Shown here piece by piece: positions 1,089 through 29,792 of a DNA stretch of 64,000 bases; position 1 is the first letter of the stretch, and each line of letters begins with the position of its first letter. The translations under genes and the position numbers were made by a program. The stretch is from sequence record MN871441.1; one strand, given 5' to 3'. The notes under the pieces were generated by a model. It saw only the letters and a list, made by a program, of their open reading frames with translations, was not told where the DNA came from and made no database searches.

Positions 1089-4000
1089 TATTGTTCTACC
1101 TTAACTTGGGTAGGTGGTACTGGCACAAGGAGTTTACTTACATCACGAGGATTGCCTATATCATCCTTAAGCCGTTTTTCTGACAACCGTTTAAGGTCAG
1201 AATACCTACTACTGAAATCGCTAAACAGGGGACTACCATCAAGCCTACGTGCCGATGGGGTATAAACAACACCGTCAACAGTCCAGTTCTGTTCATCTTG
1301 GTCATAATTCCTGACCTCAAATACATTACCGGTACTTGTATCAATTGCGTTATTCCACTCAGACACATCAAATGGCGTTTGTGGTTGTTCCACTTCCATT
1401 AATTCCCCAGTTATCGGGTCGAATAGAGGTACTGGATCTGTAAACGAACCATTGGGGTCTGGTACTGTTCTATATTTAGGGGTTAGGCTAGGTAAACCAG
1501 AATCCCACCGATATGATTTATTTATATCGACGATAGTCTCTATGTGTTTCATAGAAATACCCCCGTTAACCATAACAGTTAGTAGAGTAATACCAACAAA
1601 TCCAAATCCAACTGGATGAACAAACCGAATAACATCATCCTTATACCGAGATGTGTTCAATTCAGAACGAATTCTCATCATATAGTAAGATCTGTTTCTG
1701 TTTATATAATCTATGTCGGAATATGCTAGCTCTTTACCCTTAACTCCCCGAGTGACTTCACCAACAAAAGAACTAGATTCAGATTTTATTTCTTGCCCAA
1801 CTTCCAACTTCCCAATAAGGTTATGAATCGTTATTTTCCATCTTAATTGACCATCAACAAACTGACGTTCAATATAGGTAACGTTGGCTCGACCAGTTTT
1901 GGTAAATATCGTTCTTCCAACAAGATCAGTACTGATATTAGACGACTTAACCAGTATATCATAATCTATCCCAACTTGAGATTCGATTTCAATATCTACA
2001 TCGGCATCATATAGCAGTTTGAACAAGAACTTATAACTATCCAGAGTTCCCTTTGAGCTATAAAAGTTATTGGCGTTGGCTTCGAAGAATTTAACAACCT
2101 CATCTCTCTTGTTTTGGTCTAGATATATATTCCGTCGTCTCATCTCAGACCACAAAAATACAAAAGAATCTTTCTCTCTCGGGTATTTTAGTTTGATGAA
2201 ATTGAGAAGTTTACCATACATCGAATCAGTACCTTCTGATAGGAATTGAAGATAATATTCAGCAAACTTAGAGTAATTTGAGTCGTTGAAATAATGTTCA
2301 GGTCCCATAATTCTCAACATAGGTGCGATATTTGGATCAATTATACCTGTATCATCCTTCTTCTCTTCAACAACTTCTCTTTCTTGGTTTATCAAAGAAG
2401 CTTGCAACGCGATATATTCTGGTCTCCAAAATACAGATGCTTCATCCCTAACACGATAAGGGAACTCATAGTATCCAAATATCTCCCCACCAAGACCATT
2501 CTCTCTATTGTAGGCAGTGTGAATCAAAATACCGTTACAATACTTACTAAAGTTTTTGAAATTGATATTGTTCAGATAAAATTTTACAGAACCTTTATTC
2601 CAAACTTCTTTGTTATATTCCCGTGTAGGGTCTATGTTATATTGGTATTTGGTGGAAGGTGTTATAAGAACTATTCGGTTTTCATGGTTTTTCCAAACCC
2701 TCTCCCCAGTCATAGCCATATAATCAAACCCAGCCTCGTTATAATATCTAGCTGGTCTTAAGGAGAAAACATCACCATCTTCGGTTTCCCATTGATAAAT
2801 GAAAACTTTCTTTTCACTAAGATATCCAAAATCGGAATTGTATTTTACCGCATAGGTCACATCATCCGGGTATTTATTAACGGTATCAAGATCTTCGATA
2901 GTATTTGTGTATTTATAAGTTGCACCGGATACAAATAATTTAGTACCATCAACACTCATATCGGAATATTTGTGTTCGATATTATACCGTTCATCCTCAG
3001 TATTTCCAAACACTCTTTCCCATGACCCACCATCCGGAACAGAAGGCTTTACTATCTGCCCATCTTCTTGGTAAAGGTCAAAAATATTAGGATATGCAAA
3101 ATCATCAACAAACCGACTATATTTCACCGGGTCTACTATCTTTTGTACTGGATCGGAATAGATATCAGCAATAAACTCAAACGAGTCATGGCTATCACTT
3201 GGTACAAAGTTGACTTTCATTTGCATTCCATGGGTTCTACCTTGGAATACTCTAGATTCCCATCTAGTAGAAACTTTACCAACGTGTGTACCGTCAGGAA
3301 GGAAAGTTACCATCTCACGACCAACGTCAATACCATTTACAAAATTAATATCTTCTGTTGGGTCGGAGAAATTCATATTTCCCAACATGAAATCTTCTTT
3401 CTTGTATTTTTCGTTGAGGCGATATACACCAGAATATACAGATTTCTTTACGTTTTTCGGATCTCTTTTATCTTTCCCTGCATCTACTTCACCGGATACC
3501 AGCGCATAACAAACCTCGTTAAGTACATCCATTTTCTTAACTACTACGTTTGGATTATCACAGATCGTAAAGACTTCCGGGTCCCATATGATATTACCTT
3601 CATTATCGGTTGGACCACCAGATACTCGTATACGTCTAGCAACACCATTTGCAGCGGCATATAGCCACATATTAGAGGACGTTTGAGCTTCTACTTTTCT
3701 TCTGATATCGTCTGGGTACTTGGCAAAAGTCCCAAAGAACATAGTAGGAAATGGGATAGACGAATCAGTATCCATCTTAACAAATGTAAGCTGATCATCC
3801 GACCAAAAATGAAGGTCTGAGCTAAATCTTACTTCATCAACATTTCGTCCGTAAAAAGCAAAATCATAACCAAGAAGGAAAGATGTATTCCTGTTTTGGC
3901 TCATTACGGTATTACCGGTTGGATATCCAACGCGATCAGAAATAGCTTGGTAGTAATACCAGTTCTGCCCACCGTCATTAGTTACCTTACAGTAGTTTTG

Positions 4001-24362: not shown

Positions 24363-24612
24363 TATGAATTTTTTAGAATCAGAAAAAGTAACTTGGGGTG
24401 GAAGAATATACCCGCTAGATATAGCAAACCAAATATGTTCTGTTCAGCCTATAGACCCTGAGCCATTTCGAAAACTATATGAGCGGGCTAAAGAGAACGA
24501 ACGTATTAAGAATCGGCTTTCTAAAGCTTTTATGGTCCCTGTATCAAGGATCGACGCATACTGTGTAGAAGCATATCGACTTGGTATAAAAGAAAGTAAA
24601 AATAAAAGTTAA
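24352..24612 (+). CDS. Hypothetical protein
   Basis: Coupled ORF of 84-86 aa. Confidence 0.6.
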   Translation: MRNDMNFLESEKVTWGGRIYPLDIANQICSVQPIDPEPFRKLYERAKENERIKNRLSKAFMVPVSRIDAYCVEAYRLGIKESKNKS

Positions 24613-24649
24613 ACATACTTTCTAACTGTGATATGATGTTTATATAAAT
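24601..24649 (+). promoter_or_regulatory. tRNA promoter, 49-bp direct repeat copy 1
   Basis: GTTAAAC...TGTGATATGAT extended -10; one mismatch against 25760-25808. Confidence 0.8.
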
Positions 24650-24651
24650 GA

Positions 24652-24744
24652 GCGTGAGTGGCGAAGTTGGTTGAAACGCATCGGACTTAAAATCCGATAC
24701 TGCATAATGGCACATCGTGGGTTCGATTCCCACCTCACGTACCA
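24652..24744 (+). tRNA. tRNA-Leu(TAA)
   Basis: Cloverleaf; TCGGA-ctTAAaa-TCCGA; long variable arm; GTTCGATTCC; CCA. Confidence 0.93.
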
Positions 24745-25369: not shown

Positions 25370-25764
25370 ATAAACATGATATTCATCTCATTGGTATTAG
25401 TAAGTTTATCAAGAAAGGTCTTACTGTGGTTCAATCAAGTTTGATCTTCAAACAAACCAGTGAAGAATGGAAAAATATCCATGGTGTTGATGTAGACAAG
25501 ATTTATTGCTATATTAACAACGAGGGAAAGGATATCTACGCAATTGGTAGACTTAGATCCTGTTGCGGACCTTGGTTGAGTGTTAGTTGTCGGTCTCTCC
25601 GTAAAAAAGGTTATATAGCATTTGACTTTAACGATGAAATTGAGATACCATATGGTTCAGGGATGAAAACTGCTTATAGGGTATTGTTTTCTGACACCCC
25701 TAAATACGAGTATGATGAAGAAGCTAGACATCCAGTCGCTTACTTCGAAAAATACTTCAAATAA
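25366..25764 (+). CDS. Hypothetical protein
   Basis: 132 aa, ATGA overlap with the previous ORF. Confidence 0.7.
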   Translation: MNKHDIHLIGISKFIKKGLTVVQSSLIFKQTSEEWKNIHGVDVDKIYCYINNEGKDIYAIGRLRSCCGPWLSVSCRSLRKKGYIAFDFNDEIEIPYGSGMKTAYRVLFSDTPKYEYDEEARHPVAYFEKYFK

Positions 25765-25808
25765 AAGTTAAACATCCTTTCTAACTGTGATATGATGTTT
25801 ATATAAAT
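25760..25808 (+). promoter_or_regulatory. tRNA promoter, 49-bp direct repeat copy 2
   Basis: Near-identical to 24601-24649; directly precedes tRNA-Arg. Confidence 0.8.
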
Positions 25809-25809
25809 T

Positions 25810-25886
25810 GCGCTGTTAGCTCAGTTGGATAGAGCAACGTTCTTCTAAAGCGTGGGTCACTGGTTCGAATCCAGTACGGCGCACCA
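25810..25886 (+). tRNA. tRNA-Arg(TCT)
   Basis: Cloverleaf; anticodon loop ctTCTaa; CCA. Confidence 0.95.
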
Positions 25887-27071: not shown

Positions 27072-27349
27072 CTTAGCACAAAGAACGGGTAACGACGTAT
27101 GCCCCGGAATAAGCCAGCCATAGAGAATCTGGATATCCTGAAACGTGCCTTTAGGTTTCAGGCGGGATTGGTAGTATAAAGACGATATGGTAACTACTCC
27201 TTGACAAGCAGGGTTGAACTTGAGGTAACTGTCCTTTACCAAACAACGAACAGATGGACAAAATCAGTTGAACGTCCTTCCTCCTTGTGATAGCATGTCA
27301 ACTACATTAGGATATAATCACAGTCTAACGATCCTGATTATAATCCGCT
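27072..27349 (+). ncRNA. Candidate ~280-nt structured RNA
   Basis: CCTGAAAC/GTTTCAGG and TATAATCA/TGATTATA hairpins; long-range GCGGGATT/AATCCGC and TTGACA/TGTCAA. Confidence 0.55.
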
Positions 27350-27425
27350 GCCGAATTAGCTCATCTGGTAGAGCACAGCCTTTGTAACGCTGGGGTGGTC
27401 CGTTCGAGTCGGACATTCGGCACCA
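27350..27425 (+). tRNA. tRNA-Thr(TGT)
   Basis: Cloverleaf; ttTGTaa; CCA. Confidence 0.93.
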
Positions 27426-27430
27426 AATTT

Positions 27431-27892
27431 TGGATTCTCGTCAATAGTCCGGTCTATGAGAATCGACGCTTTAAGTAGCCCACCGGTATTTGTAAAAAAT
27501 CTAGTGAAAGCTAGAAAATAAAAACCGAACCCCGACCTCTCCCATTACTCAAATGGTGATGTAGGTTCCTTCCCTGTAATAAGGTTCTAGTCCGTGACGG
27601 GTAAAAGGTTACATAGGGAGTATTGCTTGTGAATGACCACTGATTCAAGCCATCACATAAGCTCGTCCGTTATGACGTTAAATATAAGGCTTAGATTCCC
27701 ATAAGGGCCTAAGCGTAAAAGTAACGAGCAAGACCGTTTTGCAGGCGTAGCCCATTGGGGTGATGATGTTTGTATGTTGGGCTCGGATAGCCAATGCTAT
27801 TAAGTCCGGTGATGGTGCGACCGGATCGATTTACGGAACCACATCAACAAGTATGTGCCTTGGTGGTTCGACCTGCTTTGCAGCCGCACATG
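27431..27892 (+). ncRNA. Candidate ~460-nt large structured RNA
   Basis: No ORF of 60 aa or more; about ten nested helices found by eye (see findings). Confidence 0.6.
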
Positions 27893-28244
27893 AAGCTAAA
27901 ACTTAAAAAGAGAGGTTGTATATGTCACCGCTAAACGCAAGCCGTTAGGACGTAAAGGTAAAAATAGTGTTTTTGTAAATGGTTATACCAATAATGGTAT
28001 TCCGGTTTTATGTAATGTATTTTATCAGTTTGAAACAAATGGTATTCCATTGGATATTCTGATAGAGAAATTTTATAATTCCGGTTATATTATTGATTGG
28101 GTTTCTTTCGTTAATGATGCTTTCAAGATCGGATGGAAGAAAGAAACTGTAATAAAAAAGATAAAGTATGCATTTGATGATATTGAGATAAATGATTCAA
28201 ATGAAATACTAAACCGTGTGATTAAATACATAGAAAGCCTGTAA
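27890..28244 (+). CDS. Protein with an alanyl-tRNA-synthetase-like segment (start uncertain; possible 1-nt error in the A run at ~27905)
   Basis: FYQFETNGIPLDILIE...YIIDWVSFVNDA resembles the AlaRS FKLYDTYGFPLDLT segment. Confidence 0.5.
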
Positions 28245-29237: not shown

Positions 29238-29792
29238 ATGATGATATCGCCAAACAGTTTCTTTAGAGACGAATATGTTAGTATGGTAAACAAAAAATTA
29301 AAATTATTTAAAAGTTCCGAATATATAGACAGGAGTCGATTGATGAAGTCTCCTGATGCATTCCAACAAGAGTTGGGGACTATATGCTTGGATATGGGAA
29401 GACAAACAGGAAAAACATCTGCTGCTATTATGTTGTTAGAAGAACATAAAGACGCTTTGTATGTTGTTCACAACCATCCTACTATCAGATCTATATTGTC
29501 GGTGGCACCACATTTAAAAGACCAAGTGTTGTCAATTAGCGACTTTGTTAATAGGTTTTATTCTCGTGGTACATACAATCATGTTATTCATGGAAGTAGG
29601 ATTGAAAAATATAGTATGATCATTATTGATGAACCTTATTTCACATGTACCAATGGTCAGAGACAATTCACTAATCGTAGTAGTTGTTCATATCACTTGG
29701 ATGGTGGTAAACAAATAAATACCACATACGGTCTAATTAGTTATGCCGCATTCAGGATGGAATCATTAATCGTTAAATTGGGAATGCAATGA
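29238..29792 (+). CDS. P-loop NTPase-like protein
   Basis: MGRQTGKT Walker A; IIIDEP Walker B. Confidence 0.7.
   Translation: MMISPNSFFRDEYVSMVNKKLKLFKSSEYIDRSRLMKSPDAFQQELGTICLDMGRQTGKTSAAIMLLEEHKDALYVVHNHPTIRSILSVAPHLKDQVLSISDFVNRFYSRGTYNHVIHGSRIEKYSMIIIDEPYFTCTNGQRQFTNRSSCSYHLDGGKQINTTYGLISYAAFRMESLIVKLGMQ

What the first reader, a model, noticed from the sequence alone, without database searches (positions are those of the whole stretch)
27431..27892. ~460-nt highly folded RNA candidate downstream of tRNA-Thr
Helices seen: GATTCTC/GAGAATC, TCTAG/CTAGA inside CGGT/ACCG, CCATT/AATGG, GTGATG/CATCAC enclosing TCCCT-GTAA/TTAC-AGGGA and GCTTG-GAAT/ATTCAAGC, GCTCGT/ACGAGC enclosing GCTTAG/CTAAGC, TCCGGT/ACCGGA, TGATGT/ACATCA, GCAGG/CCTGC and ATGTGC/GCACAT. 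A possible pseudoknot joins CGTTAT and GTAACG. Large phage ncRNAs in tRNA clusters are known (GOLLD, ROOL), but I cannot match this to either, nor to tmRNA, RNase P or a group I intron. With the neighbouring candidates, more than 1 kb of this cluster may be an undescribed ncRNA set.
Basis: partly seen in the sequence, partly recalled or inferred. Interest (0 to 1): 0.75.

Follow-up and report, generated by a model that had tools for sequence, protein, structure and literature searches.

The report
Phage tRNA-cluster pseudoknotted RNA family
The 460-base stretch is a patchwork of small folded RNA modules, not one large RNA, and one module of about 100 bases belongs to a pseudoknotted RNA family found only in phages, in about a thousand genomes including T4, that is absent from Rfam 15 and from the papers searched.

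Summary
The window is an Aeromonas T4-type phage (Ceceduovirus). Bases 27431-27892 lie at the end of its tRNA cluster, hold no credible ORF and match nothing in Rfam 15.

The single ~460-nt RNA reading fails:
- The stretch folds no better than shuffled sequence (z -1.96, and -2.23 on the other strand).
- Relatives inherit it as at least four separate modules.
- Many relatives carry a tRNA-Trp gene inside it.

Several local hairpins are real and show compensatory changes.

The main result is module B (27519-27627; folded core 27523-27618). It belongs to a family in about 1,000 phage records. These include T4 itself (between denV and vs.8, under the annotated vs.8 start), T5-like Aeromonas phages and uncultivated phages. 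The fold has P1, P1a, P2, P3 and a pseudoknot. In 50 distinct sequences 82.8% of pairs form, against 35-53% for slid controls, with covariation above all 500 shuffles.

Copies sit among same-strand tRNA genes or directly upstream of vs.8. My best reading is a small RNA cut out of tRNA transcripts that acts on a partner still unknown. A cis-regulatory leader is the main rival.

The parts
27350..27425 (+). tRNA-Thr (UGU), the last tRNA gene of the cluster in this phage. Module A begins 4 bases after its encoded CCA end.
   Evidence: ARAGORN; Rfam tRNA model, 55.7 bits.
27429..27496 (+). Module A: a post-tRNA spacer module with hairpin 27433-27464 (GGAUUCUCGU.../...AUGAGAAUC) and a weaker hairpin at 27472-27492. 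In phage 65 and avDM6 it follows a different last tRNA (Asp).
   Evidence: blastn map; one compensatory pair, U-A to C-G, in phage 65 and avDM6; fold.
27500..27515 (+). Small hairpin UCUAG-UGAAAG-CUAGA just upstream of module B. It was seen only in close relatives and was not tested further.
   Evidence: Read from the sequence; alignment.
27519..27627 (+). Module B core: the single copy in this window of the phage pseudoknotted RNA family (folded core 27523-27618).
- P1: 27523-27526 with 27564-27567.
- Conserved single-stranded J (GAACC...): 27527-27535.
- Variable hairpin P1a: about 27538-27561.
- Pseudoknot 5' strand: 27568-27571 (CCUU).
- P2a: 27572-27574 with 27616-27618.
- P2b: 27575-27579 (UGUAA) with 27609-27613 (UUACA).
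- Conserved loop UAAGGU: 27580-27585.
- P3 hairpin with a bulged A: 27586-27601.
- Pseudoknot 3' strand: 27605-27608 (AAGG).
   Evidence: Covariance model R1 scores 93.4 bits, E 5e-19, and finds one copy only. Covariation was counted, and the pseudoknot was tested. Homologues were found.
27619..27682 (+). Module B tail: hairpins at about 27625-27662 and 27664-27677. It is shared only with Aswh_1, ZPAH1 and the close Ceceduovirus relatives, and it is not part of the wide family.
   Evidence: blastn map; alignment; fold.
27683..27828 (+). Module C: a lineage-specific structured module found in Aeromonas Emmerichvirinae only.
- Hairpin C1: 27687-27716.
- Long imperfect helix: 27725-27785.
- Hairpin: 27786-27801.
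- Hairpin: 27804-27826.
   Evidence: RNAalifold on 7 relatives predicts 43 pairs, 6 of them with changes on both sides. The MFE z-score is -2.23. It is present in phage 65 and avDM6, which lack module B.
27829..27831 (+). Empty tRNA-Trp slot. AP1, CC2, P19, Assk, ZPAH1 and Aswh_1 carry a tRNA-Trp(CCA) gene of about 75 nt exactly here. This phage and its nearest relatives do not.
   Evidence: blastn breakpoints; annotation and ARAGORN; sequences.
27832..27900 (+). Module D: hairpin GGAACCAC.../...GUGGUUC at 27836-27869, then an A-rich run before the next ribosome-binding site.
   Evidence: Alignment and fold. The evidence is weak, because avDM6 has a different hairpin at this place.
29238..29792 (+). 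Likely distant homologue of T4 vs.8, a P-loop protein of unknown function. It lies 1.6 kb downstream on the same strand, and the scan found no + strand terminator-like site between 24000 and 30195. In Tevenvirinae the RNA family lies directly upstream of this gene.
   Evidence: BLASTP to T4 vs.8 is weak and limited to the Walker A region. Both proteins end in ...GMQ. It matches phrog_2586. Terminator scan.

Best explanation
Bases 27431-27892 are the non-coding tail of the phage's tRNA gene cluster. They are a chain of small, separately inherited, structured RNA modules (A, B, C, an empty tRNA-Trp slot, and D), not one large RNA.

Module B (27519-27627; folded core 27523-27618) is a true member of a large RNA family that appears to be restricted to phages.

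Fold (shown):
- A closing helix P1 around a conserved single-stranded GAACC-type segment and a variable hairpin P1a.
- A second domain in which helix P2 encloses two nearly invariant loop strands (CCUGUAAnAAGG... and ...GGUAA) and hairpin P3.
- A pseudoknot that pairs the linker just 5' of P2 with the loop strand just 5' of the P2 3' strand.

Mechanism (inferred):
- The RNA is transcribed with the tRNAs from the early-type promoters of the cluster.
- The host tRNA-processing enzymes that trim the neighbouring tRNAs set it free, much as happens to T4's species 1 and 2 RNAs.
- It accumulates as a small stable RNA of about 100 nt.
- Its invariant loops and pseudoknot form a binding surface for a protein or small ligant partner that is not yet known. 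A link to translation, tRNA function or host defence is a guess.

In T4-type coliphages the same RNA has come to lie in the 5' leader of vs.8, where it may also act in cis.
For: Identity and context:
- The window is 99.6-100% identical over this stretch to Aeromonas phages AS-yj, AsSzw2, Assk, AS-sw, AS-zj and vB_AdhaM_G2; Assk is filed under Straboviridae, Ceceduovirus.
- It carries ten same-strand tRNA genes between 24652 and 27425.

Mosaic:
- blastn breakpoints show modules with different distributions among relatives, and a tRNA-Trp gene inside the stretch in relatives.

Family:
- The core matches unrelated phages: Demerecviridae AhSzw-1, Akh-2 and AhP_Mru1, and Straboviridae Ahp1_CNU, Ci1, S13, LPCS28, Serratia 4S, ESCO10, JD18, Melville, RB51 and T4.
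- The ESCO10 copy finds 1,043 phage records.
- Model R1 finds one copy in the window at 93 bits and the T4 copy at 79 bits.
- It also finds divergent copies in IMG/VR and in metagenomes.

Structure:
- On 50 distinct sequences 82.8% of cells pair, against 35-53% when the 3' partners are slid.
- The covariation score is 0.314 against 0.120 for shuffles (0 of 500 reach it).
- All 5 P1 pairs and 3 of 4 pseudoknot pairs change on both sides (the raw MAFFT alignment gives the same picture).
- The pseudoknot was not part of the model, so it is an independent test. It has about 12 different sequence solutions (CCUU/AAGG, CUUUU/AAAAG, CUCUU/AAGAG, CCCU/AGGG, CUGG/CCAG, CACU/GGUG, CCA/UGG and others). 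Cognate strands pair over 4 bases or more in 72% of cases, against 30% for mismatched partners.
- Many conserved G-U pairs fix the RNA on the tRNA strand.

Processing context:
- Copies abut same-strand tRNA genes. L307 starts at the base after tRNA-Met. L158 starts 2 nt after tRNA-Ser and is followed by an intrinsic terminator. L236 ends 3 nt before tRNA-Thr. L231 starts 20 nt after tRNA-Glu. More than a dozen others sit inside tRNA arrays.

Phage restriction:
- In one genome for each of 185,579 bacterial and archaeal species, only two small contigs of one MAG hold the element. The longer one (L172) carries 23 tRNA genes and looks like phage DNA.

No Rfam family matches this copy or six other members.
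Against: - There are no expression data. Transcription, excision and stability are inferred from context alone.
- In roughly a thousand Tevenvirinae genomes the element lies directly upstream of vs.8, sometimes in tandem. That pattern is typical of a cis-regulatory leader, not of a free RNA.
- P2 and the pseudoknot are joined by linkers of 0-2 nt. They may be alternative conformations, which would fit a switch, and not one static fold.
- The thermodynamic signal of the window copy is nil (z -0.15).
- The alignment used was fitted to the model's nested helices. The pseudoknot, and the raw MAFFT count, were not.
- The possible third contact (J ACC with loop GGU) has one compensated case (Melville) and one contradicting case (L151 copy 2).
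- The partner and the function are unknown.
Confidence: 0.5

Rival explanations
1. Module B is a cis-acting regulatory leader. It would be a riboswitch-like sensor, or an operator for a phage or host protein. The choice between the pseudoknot and P2 would set transcription read-through or translation of downstream genes: vs.8 in T4-type coliphages, and here the small ORFs and the vs.8 homologue at 29238-29792.
For: - Every Tevenvirinae-type copy examined lies directly upstream of vs.8.
- In those phages a further conserved 3' stretch runs to the ribosome-binding site.
- Tandem copies lie upstream of vs.8 in L151 and L154. L249 also has a tandem pair, with no vs.8 in the flanks held.
- The loop nucleotides are nearly invariant while the helices covary, as in aptamers.
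- The pseudoknot and P2 are adjacent, which could make them mutually exclusive.
- The window has a vs.8 homologue on the same strand, and the scan found no + strand terminator-like site between the element and it.
Against: - Outside Tevenvirinae the copies lie inside tRNA arrays, and no vs.8 was found in the flanks held.
- Several copies touch a tRNA gene, or are followed by a tRNA or by a strong stand-alone terminator.
- In this window 1.6 kb and four ORFs separate the element from vs.8.
- No expression platform is conserved across the family.
Confidence: 0.3
2. Module B is a self-cleaving ribozyme or a dedicated processing signal that cuts polycistronic tRNA or early transcripts.
For: - It is a compact pseudoknotted fold with invariant unpaired nucleotides.
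- It is found in phages and next to tRNA genes.
- The strand order (pseudoknot 5', P2 5', P3, pseudoknot 3', P2 3') recalls the P1-P2-P3 order of HDV-like ribozymes. The comparison with HDV rests on my own knowledge of that fold.
- Serratia phage 4S has an insertion of about 120 nt where an HDV P4 would sit.
Against: - No ribozyme family of Rfam 15 matches at E<=10.
- No J4/2 segment exists to carry a catalytic C.
- P3 and its loop differ from those of HDV-like ribozymes.
- tRNA transcripts already have RNase P and RNase E for processing.
Confidence: 0.07
3. One reading: the whole of 27431-27892 is one large ornate RNA of about 460 nt, of the GOLLD or ROOL kind.
For: - The stretch is non-coding, sits in a phage tRNA cluster and holds many hairpins.
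- Several of those hairpins are maintained by compensatory changes.
Against: - The whole stretch folds no better than shuffles, and the antisense strand does as well.
- The modules are inherited separately, and phage 65 and avDM6 lack the central 190 nt.
- A tRNA-Trp gene interrupts the stretch in six relatives.
- The long-range helices are uncompensated or conflict with covariation-supported pairs.
- GOLLD and ROOL models give no hit.
Confidence: 0.03
4. The conservation reflects a DNA-level element, such as a recombination or promoter cassette that shuffles genes in the plastic regions of T4-type genomes, and not a functional RNA.
For: - The region is plastic. tRNA genes and modules come and go.
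- CC2 has hairpin C1 duplicated around an insert of about 90 nt.
- A 61-nt promoter cassette is repeated upstream of two tRNA subclusters.
Against: - For module B the covariation preserves pairing and not sequence, and it includes a pseudoknot.
- The covariation relies on many G-U pairs, which would be A-C mismatches on the other strand.
- The orientation always follows the flanking transcription.
- No promoter consensus lies inside the core.
Confidence: 0.05

Closest known systems
T4 species 1 and species 2 RNAs (rnaC, rnaD)
   Same: They are small RNAs of about 120-140 nt encoded on the tRNA strand right after a tRNA gene in a T4-type tRNA cluster. Their role is still unknown (PMC3014915; PMC9697503). 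A convergent SNP in rnaD arose when a T4-like phage adapted to a host (PMC12685909).
   Different: They are not homologous to the new family. Model R1 finds nothing in the T4 rnaC/rnaD region at E<=10. Local alignment of rnaC and rnaD to every module of the window stays within the shuffled range; the highest z among modules A-D is 1.4, and one neighbouring spacer reaches 2.0. T4 carries the new family at another place, between denV and vs.8.
manA and wcaG RNA motifs of T4-like cyanophages (Rfam RF01745, RF01761)
   Same: They are structured RNA motifs supported by covariation, are carried by T4-like phages, lie in putative 5' UTRs and have no known ligand or function (PMC2864571).
   Different: There is no Rfam match at E<=10 or at E<=1 for six other members. 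The hosts differ (enterobacteria and Aeromonas, not cyanobacteria). The link to tRNA genes is also different.
GOLLD and ROOL large RNAs
   Same: They are often encoded in phages or prophages, sometimes near tRNA genes, and are highly structured (10.1101/2024.12.08.627333 for their structures; the link to tRNA genes is from my own knowledge).
   Different: Those RNAs are single molecules of about 600-800 nt. Here the units are about 70-170 nt and are inherited separately. Their Rfam models give no hit.
HDV-like self-cleaving ribozymes
   Same: The strands of three helices come in the same crossing order (a, b, c, c', a', b'). One member has an insertion where HDV P4 would lie.
   Different: No Rfam HDV-type model matches. 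There is no J4/2 with a catalytic cytidine. P3 is a 6-bp helix with a bulge and a 3-4 nt loop. Six conserved unpaired bases lie between P2 and P3.
Catalogue of about 10,000 candidate structured RNAs in viruses and phages (PMC10690425)
   Same: It comes from a comparative-genomics screen of IMG/VR and reports many candidates near or resembling tRNAs and candidates upstream of genes.
   Different: I could not check whether this family is among them, because no supplementary files are held. The main text does not mention T4 vs.8 or this motif.

Membership tests
New phage tRNA-cluster / vs.8-leader RNA family (model R1, built here) | Full-length match to the covariance model, with the conserved strands CCUGUAAnAAGG and GGUAA | tested here: met
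   window 27519-27627, 93.4 bits, E 5e-19, model positions 1-115 of 115. This sequence was part of the seed alignment. The independent evidence is blastn to unrelated phages.
New phage tRNA-cluster / vs.8-leader RNA family (model R1, built here) | Helices P1, P1a, P2 and P3 and the pseudoknot can all form | tested here: met
   In the window: AACC/GGUU, the CCAUU/AAUGG stem, UGUAA/UUACA plus CCC/GGG, the P3 hairpin, and CCUU/AAGG.
New phage tRNA-cluster / vs.8-leader RNA family (model R1, built here) | Same strand as, and close to, phage tRNA genes or a vs.8 gene | tested here: met
   It starts 94 nt downstream of tRNA-Thr on the same strand, and a vs.8 homologue lies 1.6 kb downstream.
GOLLD / ROOL | Match to Rfam covariance models, as one RNA of about 600-800 nt | tested here: not met
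   No hit at gathering score or at E<=10. The stretch is a mosaic of separately inherited modules.
tmRNA, RNase P RNA, group I intron | Match to ARAGORN (tmRNA) or to Rfam models | tested here: not met
   Searches gave no such hit in 27431-27892.
Degenerate tRNA gene (pseudo-tRNA) | Residual match to the tRNA model or to ARAGORN | tested here: not met
   No tRNA-clan hit in 27431-27892 even at E<=10. ARAGORN finds none.
T4 species 1 / species 2 RNAs | Encoded on the tRNA strand right after a tRNA gene of the cluster | tested here: met
   This is a resemblance of position only.
T4 species 1 / species 2 RNAs | Sequence or structure homology to rnaC or rnaD | tested here: not met
   R1 gives no hit in L136. 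Local alignment scores of modules A-D are within the shuffled range, with z at most 1.4.
T4 species 1 / species 2 RNAs | Accumulates as a stable processed RNA during infection | not testable with these tools
   This needs a Northern blot or small-RNA sequencing.
Riboswitch (as a kind) | Conserved aptamer-like fold with invariant loops and covarying helices | tested here: met
Riboswitch (as a kind) | Lies in the 5' UTR directly upstream of the regulated gene, with an expression platform | tested here: inconclusive
   This holds in Tevenvirinae, upstream of vs.8. It does not hold in this window or in the tRNA-array copies. No platform is conserved across the family.
Riboswitch (as a kind) | Binds a specific ligand | not testable with these tools
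   This needs in-line probing or ITC with candidate ligands.
HDV-like ribozyme | Rfam model match, and a J4/2 segment with a catalytic C | tested here: not met
   No Rfam hit. The pseudoknot 3' strand and the P2 3' strand are separated by 0-1 nt in most members.

The most novel reading that the evidence does not exclude
Module B represents a new functional RNA class, conserved from T4 to T5-like phages, whose pseudoknot and invariant loops bind a specific molecule. It could be a new riboswitch or ribozyme class. It could also be a phage RNA that binds and disarms a host factor acting on tRNA or translation, for example a decoy for a tRNA-targeting defence nuclease. It would be the first such RNA identified in T4 itself.
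Probability: 0.3. Interest if true: 0.9.

Novelty: new variant of a known kind. Interest (0 to 1): 0.7.

Why it matters
T4 is among the most closely studied genomes. A 2010 review states that no riboswitch and no trans-acting small RNA of T4 had been functionally characterised, and that the two RNAs of its tRNA region have unknown roles (PMC3014915).

- **An unrecorded RNA in T4 and its relatives.** The data show a structured, pseudoknotted RNA of about 100 nt in T4 and in about a thousand other phage records. It is not in Rfam 15 and was not found in the papers searched. In T4 it is hidden under the annotated start of vs.8.
- **A pattern across unrelated phages.** Its repeated placement among tRNA genes suggests that phage tRNA clusters carry more than tRNAs.
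- **A tractable system.** The question can be tested in T4 with E. coli K-12.
- **Annotation.** The result gives a covariance model and a reason to move the vs.8 start codon.
- **For the scan.** A dense set of helices read by eye was right about a structured RNA being present. It was wrong about that RNA's size and its long-range pairs.

Tried and rejected
1. One large RNA was rejected. The evidence is the fold z-scores on both strands, the module map and the tRNA-Trp gene inside the stretch in relatives.
2. Known RNA families were rejected. Rfam gathering and E<=10 scans of the window, and an E<=1 scan of six other members, found only tRNAs and noise.
3. Degraded tRNA genes were rejected, because there is no tRNA-clan signal.
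4. Homology to T4 rnaC or rnaD was rejected. A by-eye resemblance of rnaD (GGUUCC..GUAAGG..UUACAUCAC) did not survive the model search or the alignment statistics.
5. A first loose pattern scan of viral contigs returned almost only chance matches and was wasted. Tighter patterns worked.
6. The 'insertion' in phage Assk is an assembly gap of N bases, not biology.
7. vs.8 function could not be assigned. Pfam gave no family for the window homologue, PHROGs gave families of unknown function, and PDB sequence search with T4 vs.8 gave no hit below E 0.05.
8. A tertiary pairing between the J segment (ACC) and the loop (GGU) stays undecided. Melville has a compensated case and L151 copy 2 contradicts it.
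9. Literature searches by gene names, by the motif sequence and by topic found no description of the element. The supplementary files of the large phage RNA catalogue are not held.
Full report
**What the window is.** Over 27300-28000 the window is 99.6-100% identical to Aeromonas phages AS-yj, AsSzw2, Assk, AS-sw, AS-zj and vB_AdhaM_G2. Assk is filed under Straboviridae, Emmerichvirinae, Ceceduovirus. ARAGORN finds ten tRNA genes on the + strand between 24652 and 27425, the last being tRNA-Thr at 27350-27425. The finding covers the 460 bases that follow.

**Checking the observation.** The sequence is as described. No ORF in 27431-27892 is longer than 48 aa on the + strand. Rfam 15 finds only the tRNAs at gathering scores, and nothing in the stretch at E<=10.

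Folded as one molecule, the stretch is not special. Its z-score is -1.96, and 6 of 100 shuffles fold as well. The opposite strand gives -2.23. Taken one at a time, only module C stands out (z -2.23), and the module that proves most interesting has z -0.15. Helix density alone is therefore not evidence here, and the case rests on comparison with relatives.

**The stretch is a mosaic.** A blastn map against seven relatives gives these pieces:
- Module A (27429-27496) is found in phage 65 and avDM6 after a different last tRNA.
- Module B (27510-27682) is found in Aswh_1 and ZPAH1 but is absent from phage 65 and avDM6.
- Module C (27686-27831) is present in all of these.
- A breakpoint lies at 27829-27831. 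There AP1, CC2, P19, Assk, ZPAH1 and Aswh_1 carry a tRNA-Trp gene.
- Module D runs to about 27900.

A single 460-nt RNA cannot be the conserved unit if relatives lack its middle or carry a tRNA gene inside it.

- GTGATG/CATCAC, GCTCGT/ACGAGC and the CGTTAT/GTAACG pseudoknot change on one side only in Aswh_1, ZPAH1 or CC2.
- TGATGT/ACATCA spans the tRNA-Trp slot, and its changes are not compensated.
- GCAGG/CCTGC spans the same slot, but its only change keeps a G-U pair, so it is undecided.

Five local hairpins hold up, four of them with compensatory changes.

**Module B belongs to a wide family.** A sensitive search with the stretch matched a core of about 100 nt (27517-27615) in unrelated phages. 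These were T5-like Aeromonas phages (AhSzw-1, Akh-2, AhP_Mru1), Ahp1_CNU-2021 and Citrobacter phage Ci1. In each record examined the match lay unannotated inside or beside a tRNA array on the tRNA strand.

Walking outwards reached Cronobacter S13 and LPCS28, Serratia 4S and Escherichia phage ESCO10. The ESCO10 copy then matched 1,043 phage records. T4 has the element too. It lies between the denV stop codon and the ATG that starts the conserved vs.8 protein (MRTFLTG...), so it sits inside the annotated, over-long vs.8 ORF. RB51, JD18 and Melville have it at the matching place.

**Structure.** From 28 diverse copies I read a common architecture:
- P1 closes a domain that holds a conserved single-stranded GAACC-type segment and a variable hairpin P1a.
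- P2 (UGUAA/UUACA plus a short outer part) encloses the almost invariant strands UAAGG and GGUAA and the hairpin P3, which has a bulged A.
- The linker just 5' of P2 pairs with the strand just 5' of the P2 3' strand, which makes a pseudoknot.

P1 has many sequence solutions: AACC/GGUU, AAGCU/AGCUU, AAAGG/CCUUU, GGGAA/UUCCC, GGGAG/CUCCC, AGCGC/GCGCU, UGAGG/CCUCA and GUGUAU/AUACAC.

The counts support this fold:
- On the raw MAFFT alignment 83.3% of cells pair, against 36-50% for slid partners. The covariation score exceeds all 500 shuffles.
- A covariance model (R1) realigned 50 distinct sequences. There 82.8% of cells pair, against 35-53% for slid partners.
- The covariation score on that alignment is 0.314 against 0.120 for shuffles (0 of 500 reach it). 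Twenty-one of 28 pairs change on both sides, including all five P1 pairs.
- The pseudoknot was not in the model, so it is an independent test. Three of its four pairs change on both sides, and one column pair shows U-A, A-U, C-G and U-G.
- About twelve distinct complementary solutions exist for the pseudoknot. Cognate strands pair over 4 bases or more in 72% of cases, against 30% for strands taken from different members.
- Abundant conserved G-U pairs place the RNA on the tRNA strand.

P2 and the pseudoknot are joined by linkers of only 0-2 nt. They may form together in a compact side-by-side arrangement, or they may alternate. I could not tell which.

**Distribution and context.** R1 finds exactly one copy in the window (27519-27627, 93 bits). 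It finds none in phage 65 or avDM6, and none in the T4 rnaC/rnaD region. Pattern scans followed by R1 added divergent members from IMG/VR and from metagenomes.

In one genome for each of 185,579 bacterial and archaeal species, the only true hits were two small contigs of one MAG. The longer one carries 23 tRNA genes and looks like phage DNA. This scan needs an exact core pattern, so divergent bacterial copies could have been missed.

Copies fall into two contexts:
- **T4-type coliphages and their kin.** The element lies directly upstream of vs.8, sometimes twice in tandem.
- **All other members.** The element lies among same-strand tRNA genes, often touching them. L307 starts at the base after tRNA-Met. 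L158 starts 2 nt after tRNA-Ser and is followed by a strong terminator. L236 ends 3 nt before tRNA-Thr. L231 starts 20 nt after tRNA-Glu.

The window has features of both. The element lies at the end of the tRNA array. A distant vs.8 homologue lies 1.6 kb downstream, and the scan found no + strand terminator-like site between them.

**Other modules.** Modules A, C and D are confined to Aeromonas Emmerichvirinae. Module C folds into four helices, six of whose pairs change on both sides among seven relatives. Module A's main hairpin has one compensated pair. Module D is weakly supported. They look like further small structured spacer RNAs, but the sample is too small and too closely related for a firm call.

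**How it most likely works.** These points are shown: a conserved, strand-specific, pseudoknotted RNA fold, restriction to phages in the collections searched, and linkage to tRNA genes or to vs.8.

These points are inferred. The RNA is co-transcribed with the tRNAs. Promoter-like cassettes lie upstream of the tRNA subclusters. The enzymes that process the neighbouring tRNAs release it, and it persists as a small stable RNA that binds a partner through its invariant loops.

The nearest precedent is T4's species 1 and 2 RNAs, which are positional analogues and not homologues. Their function is also unknown (PMC3014915, PMC9697503). The main rival is a cis-regulatory leader, favoured by the vs.8 linkage and the tandem copies. 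A ribozyme, a DNA-level cassette and the single large RNA are less likely, for the reasons given under the rival explanations.

**Novelty.** No Rfam 15 family matches this copy or six others. No paper in the library contains the core sequence, and topic searches found no description. I could not check a catalogue of about 10,000 candidate phage RNAs (PMC10690425), because its data files are not held. I therefore rate the family as a new one of a known general kind (a structured phage non-coding RNA), and not as already known.

**Verdict.** The large-RNA idea should be dropped. The stretch does contain a well-supported member of a widespread and apparently undescribed RNA family that can be tested directly in T4.

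Noticed in passing
L138:6794-6913 (-), which is NC_000866 64,793-64,912: The annotated T4 vs.8 ORF (219 aa) starts about 120 nt upstream of the ATG (MRTFLTG...) that RB51 and ESCO10 annotate as the vs.8 start and that begins the conserved protein. The extra N-terminal part overlies the conserved RNA element, so the T4 start codon is probably annotated too far upstream.
   Followed up: partly
window 24589-24649 and 25748-25808: A 61-nt cassette is repeated at 90% identity directly upstream of two tRNA subclusters (tRNA-Leu at 24652 and tRNA-Arg at 25810). It holds a TAAACA box, a 16-nt spacer and TG-n-TATGAT, which looks like an early promoter driving the tRNA genes.
   Followed up: partly
window 27829-27831; L002:3538-3612; L004:2055-2129; L003:2044-2112: There is a presence/absence polymorphism of a tRNA-Trp(CCA) gene with clean breakpoints. 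The window and its closest relatives lack it. ARAGORN did not call the Assk copy, although the sequence reads as a tRNA with a CCA anticodon.
   Followed up: partly
L004:1770-1945 (phage CC2): Hairpin C1 (GGCUUAG...CUAAGCGUAAAAG) is duplicated around an insert of about 90 nt that contains TATAAT-like boxes. This suggests that the hairpin marks a recombination or insertion point.
   Followed up: no
L003:1809-1892 (phage Assk): The apparent insertion in this 'UNVERIFIED' record is a run of N bases flanked by a duplicated 47 nt. It is an assembly gap and not a real difference.
   Followed up: yes
L154:8965-9195; L151:5077-5306 (-); L249:797-950: The RNA family occurs in tandem copies. In L151 and L154 the two copies are separated by a short GC hairpin and lie upstream of vs.8. 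In L249 the P1 helix differs between the two copies (UGAGG/CCUCA against UAGAUA/UAUCUA).
   Followed up: partly
L134:2468-2700 (Serratia phage 4S): This family member has a structured insertion of about 120 nt exactly between the pseudoknot 3' strand and the P2 3' strand. The same arrangement is conserved in Serratia phages PS2, SP1 and Muldoon and in Cronobacter phage VP8.
   Followed up: no
L138:6795-6840 (-) and the matching stretch in ESCO10, JD18, Melville: T4-type coliphages share a further conserved stretch (AUGGAC...GUGCCAnGGAAUGGCCC) between the RNA core and the vs.8 ribosome-binding site. The window lacks it. It may be an expression platform or a separate element.
   Followed up: no
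None matches Rfam or model R1. They were not analysed further.
   Followed up: no
L172 and L186 (contigs of a 'Phocaeicola sp.' MAG): L172 is a 4.9-kb contig that carries 23 tRNA genes and an element copy nearly identical to that of the Aeromonas T5-like phage AhSzw-1. L186 (1.4 kb, same MAG) also holds a copy. They look like phage DNA binned into a bacterial MAG by mistake.
   Followed up: partly
L001:~3712-3745; L007:~1745-1790; window 27429-27466: A motif UUUUGGAUUyyy...rrrAAUCGAC, which is the module A type of hairpin, recurs after different tRNAs or modules in phage 65 and avDM6. It may be a generic post-tRNA spacer hairpin.
   Followed up: no
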